Shown: positions 20 to 9,748, numbered from the stretch's first letter. The stretch is 64,000 nucleotides of DNA from Fimbriosthenelais zetlandica (GCA_977030845.1 OZ365110.1:19034001-19098000); one strand, 5' to 3'. Numbers and translations: made by a program. The notes: generated from the sequence alone by a model not told the origin.

Positions 20-3000
20 CGTTTGGGTCTTGGATGCCTCCAGTTATACGTCAGACAGAAGCGTTTAAAGAAATTGAGGAATGATCAAGCAATCGTTCAT
101 AGATGTACGCAGGTAAGTTTAATGTGACTTCTCAATCTCAAGCTCTATATGGTAAAAGACCTGAACGGCTAGAATTGTCTCCGACCTATTTTGGTATGTA
201 TATTCATGTCATGTTTGATATATTCAGGTAGAAGACATTATCATTTAGTGATAGTTTTAATGATACGTCTTGTTTTTTCTAGCTTCAGAAAATGGCATGG
301 ACACTCTGGCAAACCCGATGTGAGGAGCGGGAAGAATATCAACTCGCAAGTGCTTTAAGACTAGCTTCACTTCACTACAGGTTGCTATATCATTACTAAG
401 GCATACATCAGGACCTTCCTTTAAATTCCCATTTTCCCTGAAAATCTAATGAATATAATTCTACATTTCAGAGGGGTCCAACTGAAAATATCGTGGTCCG
501 TTTGGACACAGTATGTGGCCTGGAGGCGTCATAGAAAGGTAAAAATATAAAACTCTAATCTGTGTCATATCTGTGTCTTATTGAACAACTGATTTAATAT
601 GTATACTTTTGATAATAATGATCTGTTGTAGACGCAGTACCTGAAAGCTGAGGCTCACTTCTACATCACTGCCCTGCCACGGTATCTACAGCGTATGACA
701 GACTATGCGGGCTTCTGCAAGCACAAACGTGAACTAGATGCCAAGTCACAAAACTTTAGAAGGTGGGTACATTATACTCTTGAATATGGGGTATTTCTTT
801 AATTGTGCATTTCATTTTAAATCTTTCCGTGGAATAATATTATAATGTTTAATTCATGACAAGTGTTTTATTTTTATGTGGGGTTGTTCGGAAGCCTGAG
901 CAAAAACCTGTAACCATCCTGCTATTTCTTACAGAGAGAACCTCTCAGCCAGGTTTTTCTATGGTTGGGTCGAGGCGTGTCAAGTTAGTCAAGACACGAG
1001 GATGATGAATACCATGGTAGGTCCTTACCGGTAATTTCTTTTATAGATTATCATATCATTTTTTGAGAGAAAAGGGACACATGCTTATACTATATGATTC
1101 AAATATTCATTCTCGATGTCACAGGCCATCCTACACTATGAAGAATCTGCGAAGAGAAACGTATTCATTTTGTGGAAGGCAAGAACACAAGAAGTGCTGG
1201 AGGATCTGTTCAAAACCGTAAGTGGATCCAAAGAACAATTTTGAATGACTTTAACTCTTATAATAAATCAAAAAAAGCCATGGCAATGAAATTACATCAA
1301 GTATTGTAAACTAAGTTGAAATTTTCCAAAATAATAAATTATTTTTGTCCTGGTTGGGTGAAGGAAGTGGCCACAGAACACCACGAGGAGAGAGTGTGTA
1401 GGCGGGCGTTTAGAAGATGGCGTCAACATGTGAGCAACCTTCACCAGGAACATTCACAGCAGCGTCAGGCAGCCCAACACTGGTCCAAGAAAGAACTCAG
1501 CAAACACTTACAGGCATGGAAGGAGGTGATTATGATTACAATATTTAACGTCCGTGCAAAAGGTACCTTCACATTGAAGTGCATTTTACAGGATAGATAG
1601 CAGTAATCTAAAGGGAGATGATCTATTAACTCATATCTTTGTATCTTAAAGCATAAAATAGAAAATCATATTATAGAGATTTTGACCCTTAGCCCCTGTG
1701 ACATTTCAGTTGCTTGAGACTAAAAGATTTTGCGGCAATTTTTCAGTATGTTGAAATGAGGCGCGCAAAGAAGAGAAAGAAGTTGAAAGGAGATGAACAC
1801 TACACAATTGTGGCACTTGGCAAAGCTGTCGCGGCGTGGAAGGTTTGTCTGGAGGACAGAAGAGAAGTGATGGTTGTAGTGGAGGCGCGCTGGAAGGCCA
1901 GTTGTGATCTCCTGCTCAGGTAGATACAGTTTTTTTGTATAGTTAACTGGAGGTTCAGAAGGTTCATAATCTATTTCACTATCTGTTAAAATTCAATCTG
2001 TAGTCTCTGTTGTAGTTGTAATTTCTGACTAAATGACAAACTCCATGGCTGATAGAGTAGATGGCAGTAATACAGCTGACTGAATGGTGATAGGTCTTTA
2101 ACCAATAGGCATTTAACCCCTTTTACAGACGGGCCCTTCAGATATGGCAGTACCATGCTAAATTATTGAGGATGGAGAAGCAGAAGATGGCTGTTGCTGC
2201 AGCCCATCATCAGTCAAACGTCAACCGAAAAGTAGGTACTTTTTGAGTTGTGACAAGAATATGTGTTCTTAAATTTAGGTTGGTCGATACTAGCTAAATT
2301 CTGGTTTTGTTTCAGATTATTCATCATTGGCATGACTATGTCATTAGTCGAATAGAAAAGAGACGCAAGAGATCGGAAATGCTAGAGGCTGCTGAAAGCC
2401 ACTTGCAACAAGGTAGCAATTTACTCATTTAGTAACACACATTTATTAATTTTTTGCCATCAGAACTTTTTATTGTACCCTACTCTTTCATCACATATGT
2501 GACAATCCTTAGTCAGAGGCATGGTATTCATTAACATATCTACAATTTTAATAATTCCATATTACAGTTCGACTTGAGCTAGTGTTCAAACGCTGGAGAA
2601 ACAGATGCAATGAAGAAATGGTTGACAGATTTAAAAGCGAGAAAGCTCGCAAATATCATTACTTTGTAACTCTGCACAGAGCGTGGAATGCATGGTCGAG
2701 CTACACTCAGATATCCATCAGGAAACAGGTAAATTATCTACCTTAACGGTAATCTGTCCCCAGCTCCACACTTAATTTCAATTTAATCTCAATCAGTAGA
2801 ATATTAGTTGACTAATGGCTATTATGATTTCAGTTGTTGGCAAGACAATCTCAGCGCTACAATAGAATGCGTCTGACGAGGACATATTTCATCTGCTGGA
2901 AAGAGTCCCTCCAGTCGGCTCAAGAGTTACAAAACAAAACAAATATAGCGCTTTGGCAATGGTGCCTCACCCTGCAACGAAAGGTAGGCCTATGTACTTG

Positions 3001-6000
3001 GATATTGAATACGTATTGATTTCTTTCATCTGATACAACTTGGGAAATCATGTAATCTGGAATATGCAGGTTGTTGGTTAAGTTATCGTCAATTTGTCAT
3101 GGAATTGTTCTTGACATCATGGAGACTTTAGTCCACAGTTGCCCATAATACTGGAAGCAAAGACTTCACTCTTTATACAAACCCTAGGTTATTTGCATGG
3201 ACAGTTCTACAGCCTTTTGGAGCATCTCTTCATCATCCTCTTCCTCAGCAGAGTCCGCATCTTGGGGAATTGGTGCTTCTTGCTTTACATTCTTTTGTTC
3301 CATCAGGGATAACATGATGGCCTTCTTAAGAGCTTCTTCCTCATCATATGCAGCTCCCTCTCCCTCTCCCTCCTCATCTTTTTCATTCTCAGCATCATCT
3401 TCATTCCCTTCATCACCAGATCCCATCAGCAAAAGTTCATCTTCATTTGCCACTGCTTCCTTCTTCAGGTCTTCTGCAACCTTCCGGTCTTTACTTTTCT
3501 CTGTCGTTTCTTTGCTTTTCATCTTCGGTTCCTGACCATACGAGATCAGTTTTTCTGCCAGCCACTTTTCCCATTCCTCATCAGGCCCAACATCCAGTGC
3601 CATTTGGAAGGCTTCCACTGCTTCCTCCCTTTTTTCTATCTTGGCCATGGCAAGACCCAGCAGGGCATAACTTGTGGGAGAAAATGTCTCAGATATATTT
3701 TTGGTTTTATCACAGAAATCCTTGAAATCTTTGATAGCATTCTCACGTTTCACACCTTCGGTCACAATTTGGTCTTCAACCAGAGATAAGAAGAACATAT
3801 GTGCCAAAGCTGGAACTGTTTCTAACTGACCGCCCAGTGCTTCAGCCATTGCTCTCATGTCTGGATGGAGAGATACAATCTCATTGCTATCATAGCTGTT
3901 GGCTGCTGTCAATTCTGAAAAAAAAATGTTTAGATAAATTGGGAATTAACCGTCAATTTCAGGCCTGTTTAATGTTTGGACCATTTTCTTTAATGTTAGT
4001 TTATGTTGAATCGACTTGCAGAATTAACCCTTGATTTACTAAGACCCCACCCTGTCAGCTAACCTGTCAATATTATTAAAGATTAATATTACCATCAGAG
4101 TTGACAATGTCAGTGATCAAATCCTTTGCTCTTTGCCAGTCTTGAGTGTACCGTAAGAAGACCACATAGTCTGCTTTAGTTGATGCTGTCACTCCCGATT
4201 CAGCCATTGCAGCCTCAAACATGTCTTTGGCCTTTGACTTGTAAGTCTCTTCCCCTGCCACATACATGGAATGATAATTGCATCCAAGATTCCCCATGTA
4301 TGTATGTTTAGCGGGCAGGTCTACTTTCTCTATTATATACTCATAGAGAAAACAACTCCAGTAGATATTCTCATGGAGTCTTGAGACGACGAAGTCCCAA
4401 ACCCCGTCTTTCAACTCCATCCCCTTTTCTTTCACTAGATTTTCCACTTGCCTGTGGAAAAGGGCAATCTTTTCAAAGGCAACCTCTTTTGTCAGCTCAG
4501 TATCTTTCGTACCTGCTTTGTTAATCATAAGGCGGAGCAGGAAGGGAACGAGGACATACATAAAGGAATGCGCTTCATTTTGTGGATGCATTCTACTTTC
4601 GGTTACATCGAGAATCGGTTCAAATACTTCCCGCTCGATCCCCAGATTGGAATCAAATTGAAAGGAGAGATTAAAATCAATAAAAATAGTCAGAGCGTCA
4701 CTTCTTGCCTCTGCCAAAGCCACTTGAGTTGCATCGAGGAAATCTTCTGATATTCCACTGAGGAGGTTTCTACTGGGAATGAAGTAATCTGGGAACTCTC
4801 CACTGATGATTTGGTGCAGAAGGCTATCTAGGCAGTACATGAGGAGGGCAGTTGTTTGATCGAGCCTCCATGAGCCAGGCTGAACTTCTTCACACATCCT
4901 CAAGAAGTTAGCTCTCAAATGCTGCATCTGTAACACTCGTGGGCAGCTGAGTTTCTAAAATATAGAAAGAAACGGAATTTTCAGATCATTTTTTTTGTGA
5001 ATTTGGTGCATATGTCATAAACAACATGTAATTAAAACGAATGATATCCAAATTCAATCATTAATCTCTTTAGGATTGATGGGGAGCAATGCATTACATT
5101 CAGGAATAATGTGAAAAAAGACAAAATCATGTCTTACCTGGAACCACAATATCTTCAGCAGCGTGAAGACATATTTCTGTATTGGAGACAATGAACTCAT
5201 AAGCCTACGTTCCGCCACCGCAAAAGAATACGTCCAGGAGGCTTCAGATGTTGGGACGACATAGCACCCTTCACTTTTAACTTTCTCCATTATATCAGTA
5301 GAAGGCCAGTCATGTTTGCGTGCCCTGGTGAACCATTCCATAGCTACTTCTGGCCACTCGGGGCAATTAAAAGCATAGGAATGGCTCCATAGATCTACCT
5401 TAGTGTTGTAATGCTGAACATCTTGCTGATCTATGGTTGGCAAAGGTTGTATATGCCCCGTTTTGAAATTGGGCACACCTCGGGTAAATGGCTTCGGTGA
5501 AAGATAGACTTTGTCCTCGATTCCATTGCTTGTCAGGTTTTGACTCACCAGAACTTCTGCCCCTCTTAATTGAAGGTTTAATAAACCCCCTCCCTTATCT
5601 TTTATGATTGCCAGTGTTGGTTGCCCAACCCTTGGCTTTTTGTTCTCGCCTTGCTCGGATTCTAATGCTTGATTTTGGGAAGTTTTCCTTTCAGGATCTG
5701 AATGTATTGTACAAGTTTGATTCACTAGGTAGACTTCTATGTCAGTGTCCTCTGTATTGGTCTGTGTTTTCACCTGTAGAGCAGTTGGAACTTGTACCCC
5801 TTGGACAATCCCACCTGTCACGTCTGGTTCATGGTTGGCATAGTTATATCTCGCCTTGATTCTGGAATTTGAAAGAATATTATGAGAATAATATCCAAAT
5901 ATCTTATAACATTATCTTATTTATGCTGCAGTTCAAACATATTCCAAGTATGATTTTGCCATACACAGTCAGCATACTTACTCCTTGATTTTGGCTGTAT

Positions 6001-9000
6001 CTGTAATTGCTATATGATCGTCTAAGAGCAAAGTCCTGAATACAAAGTTGGATACACTGACTGGGCAGTGCAAGTGCCAGTCCCAGAGCAGGCCACCATC
6101 CTCCATATTAAACATCACCTAGAAGCAAGTGAAATATAATACAATTTATATAATTCAGAATAATGAAATTATGATTTAAAAATATATATCCTATAACATG
6201 CTACACTTGTATAGCCCTAGGCACCAAGCAAGTGCCTATTTGTATAATATGCCCTACACAAAATATTTGTCTAAATAGCTTAGTTTCTGGCTAGTTTCAT
6301 TTTCAGGTTAGTTTCATTTTCAGGTCAGTAGTCATACATCTTTCTTAGAAGATCAAAATACATCAAAATTGAATTCCCAACTGTATAAGCTACCTTAAAT
6401 ATCAGGTGTATAGAATGAAGAGAATTAAAAATACTTACTTTAACCACTGCGCACTGGCCACTCGATATTCCTAGAGTAGATAGGGGCAATCAGTATCTTT
6501 GTAGTGTAACCTTACAGTACTGAGTAGGCCCTGCAGCTCTTTCCCGATGCTTCGGGCCGTGAGTGGGGAATCCCAATGTTGCAGCTTGAGGATATTGATT
6601 TTACTGCTCTATAAAAAAGTGCATTATATCGGCCAAACCATGGTTTCCAAGTATGACACTGCAAACCATTGATTGAGATTCATAAGAGAATATTATTTCA
6701 TAGCACTTTTCAACTTGTTATTCTTTTCAATACTACAATACTACTAATTTAGTATCTCCCTAGAGTGTAGTGTTGTACCTATATGCTTAACCGACCCAGA
6801 TCTAAGTATCTGGGCCATCATGGATTCGCCTGTAGTGTGTCCCAACTTGGCTAGGGGACGGCTATGGTTGAGTTAAATTTAGTGGGAGGGTGATGGAGGT
6901 TGGGGTTTGGCAGTAACCATCACATTCTGCACTACGTCTACCTGTACGTACTGGCTAGGGGACGAGTCATGCATTTTTATATTGGCTACATAATACATTT
7001 CATATATATTTATACATTTCATAATTATATGAAAAATATATTATAAAAAAATGCCATTGTACATAAAATGTTCACAATTATTTGTGAAAATTGTCACTGA
7101 ATTATCATTCTGATTTCTTTCCCAGACTCTCATCATGTGGTATGTATATACCCAGCACAGGAAGAGGAAAAAGGGAAGAGTAGCTCAAGCTCTGGAGAAG
7201 AGGAGAAATATGCTTGTTAAACGAGGAGCAGCTCAGTGGCTGAGTGTGGCTTCTGATCTGGCTCAGATGAGACAGAAGTATGCTGCCAAACAAGGGGCAG
7301 AGGTAAGTGAAAATCTAGTCCCTTCTGACTTTAATACCAGTTCCCTTAGATATCTCTTGCTTTCTGAAATATCCATTCAACTTTTCATTTTTTTCTCAAA
7401 ATCTCGATTCTCCTACGTTACTCTGTAATGAATTTGCATCAGAATTACAAAAAAAAATTTATTGCAATCTTTCTCAGTTTAGCACTGGGTGACATGCATC
7501 TCCGAAACATTAACCTATACTGTGCATGTTTAATCTCATTTTTTTCCCCCTTTATCTTAGAAATCGTACAGAACCCATCAGGTGGTGGCCCACTGTGTGT
7601 CTCATTGGAGATCGTGGGCAGCGAGGAGGAGACTGGAGAGACCTCCTTCAGAGAGACTAGAACCACAAAGCATCACAGAGAAGGCTTTACCCAAAAGCAA
7701 TGGTCCACCGCATGAGCCCAACCTTCAAAATAAACCATCCTTCCGAGGAATTGATTTCATGCTGCCAAAGCAATCGGTGAATTCTCCCATTAAAATGCTG
7801 AACGCAGGGAACCACGAGTAAGTAAATTATATTTCGCTGATTACATTCTCAGCTTTTCCTGTTGAAATGATGAAGAGATAAGAACAGGTGGGATTTTCTA
7901 TGTCAAATCAACTTTGAGTTTCCTTTGTGGTAGGTATCTTCCTCCTGGAGTCGGGAATATAAAGGCTCCAAGAGCTGTACCCAGAACTCCCGCATTCTTA
8001 CTCGAATCTCTCAAGAAAGATGGCCTCTACTCATCAATGGACAAGACGGGGTGAGTTACTCCACTTAATTGAATAAAATAAATTATGTTACGATAAAATT
8101 ATTTTACAAAAACACCAGATCCCTGACCAGTATTGAATTGGTTAAAACGTTTTTGTCATTAAGTACTACCGGTATAAATACTGCATAAGTTTATCATATT
8201 GAATTTGTTACAGGGTCGAGATTTCGGTCCCCTTCGTGCCTCCTGACTCCAGCACCTCATCAAGTGATAACCCAAACCTTACATACATCATACCGGCCCC
8301 CACGAAAAGTCGCGAGGAGCCAAATAGAATCATCCATACTGACCATTCCAAACCCCACCGAGGCCATCAAAGCCATGACGAATCTCTCACCATCTCAGAA
8401 GAGGCCAGTCCTCGGCCGCCACTGAACTTCGAAACTCTAAATTCAGAAAACAAACACTTCCACCCACAGCATCTCCATCCAAGCAGAAAACTAAATGGCA
8501 ATATGGATATACAAGAGAGAATGTGTTCCACATCTGATAGTGAAGAATCGGATGTTCTTTCAGTTCAGCATCCCAAAAGAACTCAATCAGAGACCAGTGT
8601 TCGTCCAGTTATCAATGCCCCAAGCCAAAATGTCCACCTCCTTCCACCGCATGCATTCCTATTGAAAAGGGATGGTACTCCCATGACAACAGGGATGTCT
8701 GGAATCCATACCACTACCGGCGATCCAGGCTTATCTCAAGCCAAAGGGGATTATCATGAGGTCTTGCCATATCCTCACTGGTCCAAAACCAGGTCGACTG
8801 GTGCCAATGACGATACATTAGATCTTACATTTACAACTGTGGCTACCAATGTGTCCACTTCACCCAGGGTTCTCATTACAACTGCTGATATGGGGTATGG
8901 GGAGAGGAGGAAGGGGGCAGAGGAGGAAGAGATGAGCAGCTACCTCTCACCTGCTGAAGAGATGATTCACATCAGGAACAGGTTGAGAATCTTCAAGGAC

Positions 9001-9748
9001 AACAAAAATAAACTGAGGTATTTGGAAAATCTTTTCTGTTAACATGCTGTCTATGCCATATCAGAGACCCTAGAACGAGCCCAATATAGGGTCTCTGGCA
9101 ATATTTTAGTTGAATATGATACAGATAGGTAATCACTTATTCGATTCGAACCTGGGGCATCTTTCATAAGCTTTATGAATGATGCCTGTGGTACCCATCT
9201 TGCGTCCGAGTCCGTTATTAATAAAGATGCACATTTATGGCCTAAATTTTATGTCCGACTGGCCTTTTTTAATGTTTCAGGCTTGCTTGTGAACACAGAG
9301 ATCAGTTGAGGAGTTGGTTGCTAGACCAAGACGCTCATGGTGTTAATGATCCAGATGTGGCAGCTGCCCGCTTGGAATTCATCACGGTAACTTTTTCAAG
9401 TTTGTATTATGTTGGCCTAAGATTCTTCTATGTCTATGATTTAGACATTACTGTAATATTACTAATTTACATTTTTGAGTTATTTAGAGGCTACATTGAT
9501 GCTGGTTTGAGATACAGCTTATAAGATATTAATCTATAGAAATCTATTGAAAAAAAACCGATCCTCATGGTTCGGCGTTAAAATTCAGATTTTGTTTCAC
9601 ATTATAATCTAACGTTTGTATTTTTTCAAAGTTGGAAGAAGAGGCGGAGATCCTTGGAGATTTGGTGCGGAAAAAGAAACCTCATGCAAGAAAAATGGCC
9701 ATACGAGTCCAGAAATTGTTAAATTTAAATCCCACATTCAAACGGTAG
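20..9748 (+). CDS. SFI1: SFI1-like centrin-binding centriolar protein, 5' end outside window; 18 exons: 20-112, 283-380, 472-538, 632-762, 935-1016, 1125-1217, 1364-1525, 1747-1919, 2129-2231, 2316-2412, 2568-2728, 2834-2983, 7126-7302, 7561-7817, 7934-8050, 8214-9017, 9281-9386, 9632-9748
   Basis: All exons are bounded by AG/GT and splice in frame. The product has repeated Trp-containing basic helical units typical of Sfi1 repeats (RRAFRRWRQHV, KAVAAWK, HRAWNAWSSY, WCLTLQRKTLIMWYVYTQHRKRKKGR), then PRTPAFLLESL, a low-complexity linker and a C-terminal coiled-coil ending at TAG 9746-9748. Confidence 0.85.
3184..6115 (-). CDS. Mab-21/cGAS-like receptor (cGLR)-family nucleotidyltransferase-fold protein with TPR-like region, acidic tail and two UIMs, ~816 aa; coding exons 6115-5982, 5861-5138, 4954-4093, 3914-3184
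   Basis: Splice sites join ORFs 5054..5821, 4076..4936 and 3184..3912 in frame (2451 nt). Mab-21 motifs: TGGIVQG..EDTDIE, AFNCPEWPEVAMEWFTRARKHDWPS, EGCYVVP, WTYSFAVAERRL, HLRANFLRMCE, FPDYFIPSRNLL. TPR-like SYALLGLAMAKIEKREEAVEAFQMALDVGP. UIMs EEEALKKAIMLSLME and DEEMLQKAVELSMQ. The start ATG (6115) is inferred; small upstream non-coding exons are likely at 6439-6470 and from 6516 upward. Confidence 0.85.
6293..6321 (-). promoter_or_regulatory. Two tandem ISRE/IRF-E-like elements (GAAAATGAAACT on minus) in the first intron region of the cGLR gene
   Basis: AGTTTCATTTTC at 6293-6304 and 6310-6321, a 17-bp tandem duplication; exact match to the AGTTTCNNTTTC consensus. Confidence 0.5.
6565..6574. 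promoter_or_regulatory. Canonical NF-kB site GGGGAATCCC near the 5' end of the cGLR gene
   Basis: Exact GGGRNWYYCC match, about 450 bp upstream of the inferred ATG. Confidence 0.5.

What the first reader, a model, noticed from the sequence alone, without database searches (positions are those of the whole stretch)
3184..6115. cGAS-like receptor fused to TPR-like repeats and a tandem ubiquitin-interacting-motif tail: candidate ubiquitin-sensing cGLR
Seen: the three large minus-strand ORFs, which look unrelated in the six-frame track, splice in frame with a small 5' exon into one ~816-aa protein. It has a Mab-21 NTase/Mab-21_C core, a helical TPR-like region, a very acidic linker and two textbook UIMs (e-e-e-x-L-x-x-A-x-x-x-S) at the extreme C-terminus (nt ~3298-3342 and ~3193-3234). 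Known: cGAS and Drosophila cGLR1 are activated by nucleic acids and make cyclic dinucleotides for STING; tandem UIMs (RAP80, epsins, S5a) bind ubiquitin chains. Inference: this may be an innate-immune sensor recruited to or activated by polyubiquitin rather than DNA/RNA. I do not know a characterised cGLR with this architecture, but I cannot search to confirm novelty.
Basis: partly seen in the sequence, partly recalled or inferred. Interest (0 to 1): 0.82.

Follow-up and report, generated by a model that had tools for sequence, protein, structure and literature searches.

The report
Mab-21/TPR protein with ubiquitin-binding tail
This is a real, intact gene of a probable mollusc that joins a cGAS-like (Mab-21) fold and a helical repeat region to two ubiquitin-binding motifs. 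Its enzyme site has lost a key catalytic residue, so it is more likely a ubiquitin-linked adaptor than a ubiquitin-sensing signal-making enzyme.

Summary
Four minus-strand exons (6115-5982, 5861-5138, 4954-4093, 3914-3184) join in frame through canonical GT/AG sites into an 816-aa protein. Pfam scores Mab-21, Mab-21_C and UIM above their cut-offs. No RNA run of this species could be listed. An orthologue from another species (P0079, 48% identical) comes from an assembled transcript. That transcript maps onto its own genome with the same four coding exons and the same intron phases (2/0/1).

- The protein belongs to a large invertebrate Mab-21 plus TPR family, and cGLR-TPR fusions were already described by Li et al. 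2023.
- Most relatives keep the full G-S / D-x-D / D active site. In this clade the third catalytic Asp is Ser here (S204), Ser in P0079 and Thr in L002, and the second acidic position also varies. It therefore fails the published active-site criterion for a cGLR.
- The acidic disordered linker and C-terminal UIMs are specific to this well-supported clade. They resemble the tandem UIMs of Vps27.

My best reading is a catalytically impaired Mab-21/TPR scaffold that UIMs tether to ubiquitinated partners. I rate it a new variant of a known kind, of moderate interest. I found no paper on Mab-21 plus UIM.

The parts
5982..6115 (-). Coding exon 1 (aa 1-45, ends in phase 2). It carries the N-terminal 'W-D-W...' motif shared with the family.
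   Evidence: There is a GTAAGT donor, and an AG acceptor 3 nt before the ATG. The motif matches the N-termini of P0079, P0009, P0010, P0011 and P0012.
5138..5861 (-). Coding exon 2: nucleotidyltransferase core of the Mab-21 fold.
   Evidence: Pfam Mab-21 scores 36.9 bits over nt 5195-5374. Sp-cGLR1 (8gjy) is the best solved match by sequence. The orthologue has the same exon.
5810..5815 (-). G61-G62, the G-[SG] activation-loop motif (V-T-G-G).
   Evidence: This column is G in 51 of 53 filled rows. The next column is S or G in 47 of 53.
5735..5749 (-). D83-T-D85-I-E87: the first two acidic catalytic positions. MAFFT register gives D85/E87; the alternative register gives D83/D85.
   Evidence: The orthologues read D-D-D-V-C (P0079) and D-D-D-I-H (L002), so the MAFFT-register second position is not conserved.
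5384..5386 (-). Ser204 at the position of the third catalytic Asp (W-S-H-S-Y-A-F-N-C-P-E-W-P).
   Evidence: The family column is D or E in 41 of 55 filled rows. The profile alignment places that D on the catalytic Asp strand of Sp-cGLR1, MB21D2 and cGAS. Spacing to W-P is gap-free. P0079 has S and L002 has T.
4093..4954 (-). Coding exon 3: Mab-21_C helix bundle (nt 4727-4933), then the first part of the helical/TPR-like region (from about nt 4672).
   Evidence: Pfam Mab-21_C scores 31.7 bits. MB21D2 (7lt1) matches at E 5.6e-5. Of 76 relatives found with this exon, many are 600-1100 aa and align over the whole exon.
3184..3914 (-). Coding exon 4: end of the helical/TPR region, acidic linker, two UIMs and a TAG stop.
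   Evidence: It is colinear with P0079 and with P0077, the exon-4 ORF of the orthologue's genome.
3580..3672 (-). Last TPR-type repeat (aa 655-685).
   Evidence: TPR_2 scores 16.3 bits and TPR_1 14.6 bits, both below cut-off here. The same position scores above cut-off in relatives, for example TPR_1 at 32.3 bits in P0036. The family profile hits consensus TPR structures.
3349..3564 (-). Acidic linker (aa 691-762, pI 4.3), predicted disordered.
   Evidence: In the orthologue model, residues 685-741 have pLDDT below 50.
3298..3342 (-). UIM 1 (E-E-E-A-L-K-K-A-I-M-L-S-L-M-E).
   Evidence: Pfam UIM. The only solved-structure sequence matches to the tail are Vps27 UIMs. It is conserved in P0079 and degenerate in L002.
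3193..3234 (-). UIM 2 at the extreme C-terminus (D-E-E-M-L-Q-K-A-V-E-L-S-M-Q).
   Evidence: Pfam UIM best stretch. It is conserved in P0079 (18.3 bits) and in L002/L005 (17.3 bits).

Best explanation
The locus encodes an intact 816-aa member of the invertebrate Mab-21 (MB21D2/cGLR-like) plus TPR family. Within that family it belongs to a small, old orthologue clade that did two things. It lost the third catalytic aspartate of the nucleotidyltransferase site. It also gained a long acidic disordered linker ending in one or two ubiquitin-interacting motifs.

I propose that it no longer makes a nucleotide second messenger. Instead it would work as a scaffold. The closed Mab-21 cage and the TPR solenoid would bind a partner protein or small ligand. 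The flexible Vps27-type UIM tail would tether the protein to mono- or poly-ubiquitinated proteins, or promote its own coupled ubiquitination.

Shown:
- the gene structure and the fold;
- family membership;
- the state of the active-site columns;
- the presence and conservation of the UIMs.

Inferred:
- loss of catalysis;
- ubiquitin binding;
- the adaptor role, and any link to immunity.
For: Gene and splicing.

Fold: the AlphaFold model of orthologue P0079 has pLDDT 83 and pTM 0.77. It scores Z 25.5 with rmsd 3.0 A over 290 residues against human cGAS, and also matches MB21D2 and Sp-cGLR1.

Family: 76 relatives were found. Of 62 aligned rows, Mab-21_C is scored in 60 and TPR families in up to 15. 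AlphaFold DB neighbours are long oyster, mussel and Lingula 'C3orf59/MB21D2'-type proteins.

Active site: the third Asp column is D or E in 41 of 55 filled rows, but S in the window and in P0079 and T in L002. That column is anchored to the catalytic Asp of solved cGLRs.

Clade: the window, P0079, P0002/P0080, P0003 and P0004 group with SH-aLRT 99, nested among relatives with a complete G-S/D/D/D pattern.

UIMs:
- They score above Pfam's cut-off.
- They are very unlikely by chance.
- They are conserved at 48% overall identity while the linker diverges.
- A downstream ORF with a faint UIM hit lies in the P0004 locus.
- The nearest solved sequences are the Vps27 UIMs.

Other points:
- The core is acidic (pI 5.5), which argues against bulk electrostatic nucleic-acid binding.
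- There is a precedent for non-enzymatic Mab-21 signalling adaptors: the shrimp LvMab21 proteins bind IKK-epsilon and make no cGAMP (PMC12928593).
Against: - No biochemical data exist for this protein or for any close relative.
- The window's own protein keeps G-G and, in the MAFFT register, both first acidic residues (D85, E87). Residual or unconventional catalysis cannot be excluded.
- The register of the D-x-D motif is ambiguous, and no residue-level structural superposition was available.
- The structural model is of the orthologue, not of the window's protein.
- Expression in this species was not shown.
- UIM motifs of similar quality do not always bind ubiquitin with useful affinity.
Confidence: 0.55

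Rival explanations
1. One reading: an active cGLR whose nucleotide second-messenger synthesis is switched on, or localised, by polyubiquitin binding to the UIM tail.
For: The fold and helix bundle are of the cGAS type. G-G and two acidic residues are present in the window's protein. Most family members keep a full active site. Many cGLRs have unknown ligands (PMC9980059). The core is acidic, so the ligand is unlikely to be a nucleic acid.
Against: The third catalytic Asp is Ser or Thr in all three orthologues examined. In the MAFFT register the second acidic position is Cys or His in the other two. [quoted passage not shown]
Confidence: 0.15
2. A non-immune housekeeping or trafficking adaptor. 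The layout of a folded module, a disordered acidic linker and C-terminal UIMs is that of endocytic and sorting adaptors such as Vps27/Hrs and epsins. The protein would sort ubiquitinated cargo, or be regulated by coupled mono-ubiquitination, with no link to cGLR-STING signalling.
For: The tail's best solved matches are the Vps27 tandem UIMs, with a similarly long flexible spacer. The gene is a conserved orthologue kept next to the same W-rich-repeat neighbour gene in three assemblies. That is unlike the lineage-specific expansions of bivalve cGLRs described in PMC9980059.
Against: Its nearest relatives are the cGLR-TPR proteins with complete active sites, which are thought to be immune sensors. 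There is no membrane-binding or cargo-binding domain. No expression or localisation data are available.
Confidence: 0.2
3. The UIM-like helices act mainly in cis. The acidic C-terminal tail would dock into the protein's own TPR groove, as EEVD tails dock into TPR clamps, and keep the protein auto-inhibited. Ubiquitin binding would be secondary or absent.
For: A TPR solenoid and an extreme C-terminal acidic helix lie in the same chain. Many relatives without UIMs end in a conserved helix right after the last TPR.
Against: The motifs match the UIM consensus at every defining position and pass Pfam's cut-off. The AlphaFold model leaves the tail helices at only moderate confidence, separated from the body by a disordered linker.
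Confidence: 0.07
4. A decaying or unexpressed gene copy, that is, a pseudogene in the making.
For: The active site is degenerate. No RNA run could be listed for this species.
Against: The 816 codons are open across four exons with canonical splice sites. The orthologue is transcribed and spliced. Conservation is patterned: the core and the UIMs are conserved while the linker is not.
Confidence: 0.03

Closest known systems
cGLR-TPR fusion proteins of invertebrates (Li et al. 2023, PMC9980059, Fig. 1C/S2A); in solved structures, S. pistillata Sp-cGLR1 (8GJY) and human MB21D2 (7LT1)
   Same: They share the Mab-21 NTase core plus helix bundle. The family profile scores E 2.7e-48 to 8GJY and 6.3e-41 to 7LT1. 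The C-terminal TPR-type extension is shared with dozens of relatives.
   Different: The third catalytic Asp is replaced by Ser or Thr in this clade. An acidic linker and UIMs are added. Neither 'UIM' nor 'ubiquitin' occurs in the supplementary files of that paper that are held as text.
Human and mouse cGAS
   Same: The overall fold matches: Z 25.5, rmsd 3.0 A over 290 residues for the orthologue model. A G-[SG] loop is present.
   Different: Sequence identity is about 17%. The core is acidic rather than basic. The catalytic triad is incomplete, and there is a TPR and UIM extension. I did not look for the zinc-thumb.
Vps27 / Hrs-type tandem UIMs (1Q0V, 1Q0W, 2KDI)
   Same: Two canonical UIM helices are separated by a long flexible spacer. 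UIM 1 is nearly identical in motif positions to Vps27 UIM-1.
   Different: The E-values are weak (0.1-0.4), as expected for 20-residue motifs, so this shows a shared motif rather than homology. The rest of the protein is unrelated.
RAP80 tandem UIMs (K63-linkage reader)
   Same: There are two UIMs in tandem, preceded by acidic residues.
   Different: Pfam RAP80_UIM scores only 8.9 bits on the orthologue tail, against a cut-off of 27.3. From my own knowledge, RAP80's linkage reading depends on a short helical linker of about 7 residues. Here about 21 non-helical residues separate the motifs, so no linkage selectivity can be inferred.
Non-enzymatic Mab-21 proteins: shrimp LvMab21-1/2/3 (PMC12928593); from my own knowledge, MAB21L1 and MiD49/MiD51
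   Same: All have a Mab-21 fold used as a protein-binding scaffold without cyclic-dinucleotide synthesis.
   Different: Those proteins have no TPR extension and no UIMs. An adaptor role for the present protein is inferred, not shown.

Membership tests
cGAS-like receptor (cGLR) as defined by Li et al. 2023 | Complete active-site motif h[QT]G[SG] X8-20 [DE]h[DE]h X50-90 h[DE]h | tested here: not met
   V-T-G-G and D-I-E-V are present, with 20 residues between them. The third h[DE]h is W-S-H (Ser204), and the spacing to it is about 117 residues. Orthologues have S or T there. The criterion is quoted from PMC9980059.
cGAS-like receptor (cGLR) as defined by Li et al. 2023 | Sequence homology across both the NTase core and the C-terminal helix bundle | tested here: met
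   Pfam Mab-21 scores 36.9 bits and Mab-21_C 31.7 bits, both above cut-off. The best solved-structure sequence matches are 8GJY and 7LT1.
cGAS-like receptor (cGLR) as defined by Li et al. 2023 | Predicted structural homology to known cGLR/CD-NTase enzymes | tested here: met
   Shown for the 48%-identical orthologue P0079, not for the window's own chain. Foldseek gives probability 1.0, and VIA-align gives Z 24-25.5 to cGAS, MB21D2 and Sp-cGLR1.
cGAS-like receptor (cGLR) as defined by Li et al. 2023 | Ligand-activated synthesis of a nucleotide second messenger | not testable with these tools
   This needs recombinant protein and NTP incubation assays.
Mab-21 + TPR subfamily (MB21D2-like with helical extension) | Mab-21 core followed by a long helical region ending in TPR repeats, colinear with family members | tested here: met
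   Exon 3 aligns end to end with 600-1000-aa relatives. TPR Pfam families occur in up to 15 of 62 aligned rows. The N-terminal W-D-W motif and the 'N-x-Y-D' motif at the start of exon 4 are shared. The tree places it inside the family.
Ubiquitin-interacting motif (Pfam PF02809) | Score above Pfam's gathering cut-off and the consensus ac-ac-ac-x-hydrophobic-x-x-A-x-x-x-S | tested here: met
   The score is 26.1 bits against 21, in two stretches. Both motifs fit the strict pattern, with a shuffle frequency for two hits of about 1e-5. Both are predicted helical in the orthologue.
Ubiquitin-interacting motif (Pfam PF02809) | Conservation of the motif among orthologues | tested here: met
   Both UIMs are kept in P0079. 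The terminal one is kept in L002/L005. A faint UIM hit lies in the ORF downstream of P0004.
Ubiquitin-interacting motif (Pfam PF02809) | Direct binding to ubiquitin | not testable with these tools
   This needs pull-down, ITC or NMR with mono-ubiquitin and defined chains.
RAP80-type linkage-specific tandem UIM | Two UIMs joined by a short helical linker; match to Pfam RAP80_UIM | tested here: not met
   RAP80_UIM scores 8.9 bits on the orthologue tail, against a cut-off of 27.3. The spacer is about 21 residues and is partly non-helical and low-confidence in the orthologue model.

The most novel reading that the evidence does not exclude
This clade would be a ubiquitin-coupled regulator of cGLR signalling. 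It would be a Mab-21/TPR pseudo-enzyme, or an enzyme with an unconventional Ser/His-assisted site. Its UIM tail would recruit it to ubiquitinated signalling platforms, where it would activate, scaffold or antagonise its catalytically intact cGLR-TPR paralogues or STING/TBK1-type effectors. That would be a first direct wiring of ubiquitin recognition into the cGAS-like receptor family.
Probability: 0.15. Interest if true: 0.8.

Novelty: new variant of a known kind. Interest (0 to 1): 0.5.

Why it matters
Most animal cGLRs and Mab-21 proteins have no known ligand or partner, and what the TPR-fused ones do is unknown. This clade replaces part of the catalytic centre and adds canonical ubiquitin-binding motifs. 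That gives a concrete, cheap hypothesis: ubiquitin pull-downs, NTase assays and partner screens on one small protein family. If the protein is an adaptor, it would be a further case of the cGAS fold being reused without catalysis, and it would link that fold to ubiquitin signalling. If it is not, it remains one more uncharacterised invertebrate domain combination.

Tried and rejected
- RNA evidence for this species: two look-ups for sequencing runs (the whole gene, then exon 3 alone) listed nothing. Read laying was therefore never used.
- Word-indexed protein searches failed:
  - Exon 4 alone gave no hit.
  - Full-length P0079 gave no hit, probably because acidic low-complexity words filled the candidate list and the cluster representative is a short fragment.
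  - The exon-4 alignment recovered only L002's own fragment.
  - The breadth of the UIM clade therefore rests on four assemblies.
- I considered that the conserved C-terminal helix of many relatives ('A-E-E-N...C-x-A-x-x-L-S') is an ancestral UIM. Pfam UIM does not score it in nine tails tested, so I treat it as a helix following the last TPR.
- I considered a RAP80-like linkage reader and rejected it on spacing and score.
- I checked whether the 20-aa insertion in exon 2 could be an unrecognised intron. It has no GT/AG borders and is in frame, so I kept it as coding.
- Pfam gave no hit for the neighbouring plus-strand exons, and the Atlas supports Sfi1 only weakly.
- Literature searches for cGLR or Mab21 together with UIM returned nothing. 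One broad search was uninformative.


Full report
**Observation**

The minus strand between 3184 and 6115 holds three long ORFs and one short one. They join through canonical splice sites: donors GTAAGT, GTAAGA and GTAATA, and pyrimidine-rich AG acceptors. The result is a 2451-nt CDS of 816 codons plus a stop.

On the window's own pieces, Pfam scores Mab-21 (36.9 bits), Mab-21_C (31.7 bits) and UIM (26.1 bits, two stretches), all above their curated cut-offs. TPR_2 and TPR_1 stay below theirs.

Two such matches arise in about 1 in 100,000 shuffles of the tail's own composition. The linker is acidic, with pI 4.3.

**Splice model**

No sequencing run of this species could be listed, so the direct test was not possible. 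An exhaustive HMMER search with exon 3 led, through its best hit's cluster, to P0079.

P0079 is a 797-aa protein encoded without interruption on a 2825-nt assembled transcript contig (L001). It is 48% identical to the window's model and colinear across all three exon junctions without gaps.

Its cDNA maps onto a genomic contig of the same organism (L004) as one 5'UTR exon plus four coding exons. The introns there have phases 2, 0 and 1, the same as in the window.

The AG acceptor 3 nt before the window's ATG suggests that the window's gene also has an untranslated first exon further upstream. I did not locate it.

**What family it is**

Exon 3 finds 76 relatives. Many are 600-1100 aa long and align over the whole exon. 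They share three things with the window's protein:
- its N-terminal W-D-W motif;
- the Mab-21 core;
- a long helical region ending in TPR repeats.

Named members come from an annelid (Ridgeia) and a brachiopod (Lingula). AlphaFold DB neighbours are long oyster, mussel, scallop and Lingula proteins labelled C3orf59/MB21D2.

The family profile hits Sp-cGLR1 (8GJY, E 2.7e-48), MB21D2 (7LT1, E 6.3e-41), MAB21L1 and cGAS. Its C-terminal end hits consensus TPR proteins.

An AlphaFold model of P0079 has pLDDT 83.2 and pTM 0.77. It superposes on human cGAS with Z 25.5 and rmsd 3.0 A over 290 residues.

Li et al. 2023 already reported that some cGLRs are fused to TPR modules. The Mab-21 plus TPR part is therefore known.

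**Active site**

The published cGLR definition requires G-[SG], [DE]h[DE]h and a third h[DE]h. In the family alignment the third acidic column is D or E in 41 of 55 filled rows. Most relatives read G-S/D/D/D.

The profile alignment puts that column on the catalytic Asp strand of Sp-cGLR1, MB21D2 and cGAS. The spacing from it to the invariant W-P motif is gap-free in the window's protein.

At that position:
- the window has Ser204 (W-S-H-S-Y-A-F);
- P0079 has Ser;
- the more distant orthologue in L002/L005 has Thr.

No nearby acidic residue is conserved among the three.

The first motif has two possible registers. In the MAFFT register the window has D85 and E87, P0079 has D and C, and L002 has D and H. 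In the other register all three have D-x-D. The strand boundaries in the model favour the MAFFT register (my reading).

Either way the triad is incomplete, so I do not file the protein as a cGLR in the enzymatic sense. It is a Mab-21 family member with a degenerate site.

**The clade and its tail**

A quick maximum-likelihood tree on the exon-3 region groups the window, P0079, P0002/P0080, P0003 and P0004 with SH-aLRT 99. This group sits among relatives with complete active sites.

Evidence for the tail across the clade:
- In L002 and L005 the gene has the same exon layout and ends in one UIM at 17.3 bits. The position of UIM 1 is degenerate there.
- In the P0004 locus the ORF after the Mab-21_C exon carries a faint UIM hit, but its DNA could not be fetched.
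- Outside the clade no relative has a UIM.

The UIM tail and the loss of the catalytic Asp therefore coincide in one lineage.

The gene's neighbour is conserved as well. Five plus-strand segments with W-rich repeats lie just beyond the gene's 3' end, on the opposite strand. They are colinear with segments in the same relative place in L002, L005 and L004.

**How it probably works**

The tail is disordered for about 55 residues and ends in two helices at moderate confidence. Its only sequence matches among solved structures are the Vps27 UIMs, including the tandem-UIM fragment and the UIM-ubiquitin complex.

The roughly 21-residue non-helical spacer and the RAP80_UIM score of 8.9 bits argue against a RAP80-like linkage reader. 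From general knowledge of UIMs, such a tail binds mono-ubiquitin weakly, gains avidity on chains or multiply ubiquitinated targets, and often promotes ubiquitination of its own protein.

The core is acidic (pI 5.5), unlike DNA-binding cGAS. There is a published precedent for Mab-21 proteins that signal by binding a kinase without making cGAMP.

Putting this together, I favour a catalytically impaired scaffold tethered to ubiquitinated partners (0.55). The alternatives are:
- an active ubiquitin-switched cGLR (0.15);
- a non-immune sorting-type adaptor (0.2);
- a tail acting in cis on the TPR groove (0.07);
- a decaying gene (0.03).

**Novelty**

Full-text searches for cGLR or Mab21 together with UIM found no paper. 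The held supplementary files of Li et al. hold neither 'UIM' nor 'ubiquitin'. The library misses most subscription papers, so this is absence in what could be searched.

The combination is a new variant of a known kind. It is interesting as a testable lead, but less so than a ubiquitin-sensing enzyme would have been.

Noticed in passing
window 1702-3019 (+), also candidates at 7114-7425, 7561-7818, 8203-9039 (+): Plus-strand exons with W-rich repeats lie tail-side of the Mab-21 gene on the opposite strand. They are colinear with segments at the same relative place in L002, L005 and L004, so the neighbourhood is conserved. Pfam gave no hit and the Atlas only a weak Sfi1 lead, and I did not verify the exons beyond 7100.
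   Followed up: partly
C-termini of P0008, P0012, P0017, P0027, P0036, P0056, P0074: Many Mab-21/TPR relatives end in a conserved helix 'A-E-E-N...C-x-A-x-x-L-S'. It fits the bare L-x-x-A-x-x-x-S spacing of a UIM, but Pfam UIM does not score it. It is probably the helix that follows the last TPR. Whether the true UIMs of this clade grew out of it is open.
   Followed up: partly
window about 3430-3450 (-), aa about 729-735: A short hydrophobic patch inside the acidic linker (D-E-L-L-L-M-G) is kept in the orthologue (E-D-F-L-L-K-G), while the surrounding linker diverges. It may be a short linear motif.
   Followed up: no
window about 5650-5710 (-), aa about 98-117: A 20-residue low-complexity insertion in the NTase core is absent from the orthologue P0079. 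It is in frame and has no splice-site borders.
   Followed up: partly
window 2787 (-) relative to 2834-3019 (+): The first poly(A)-signal-like hexamer after the stop codon lies 396 nt downstream. The 3'UTR may therefore overlap an exon of the opposite-strand neighbour.
   Followed up: no
L002 and L005 (same ENA assembly, two contigs): Two near-identical copies of the orthologous gene lie on different contigs. They are either haplotypes or a recent duplication.
   Followed up: no
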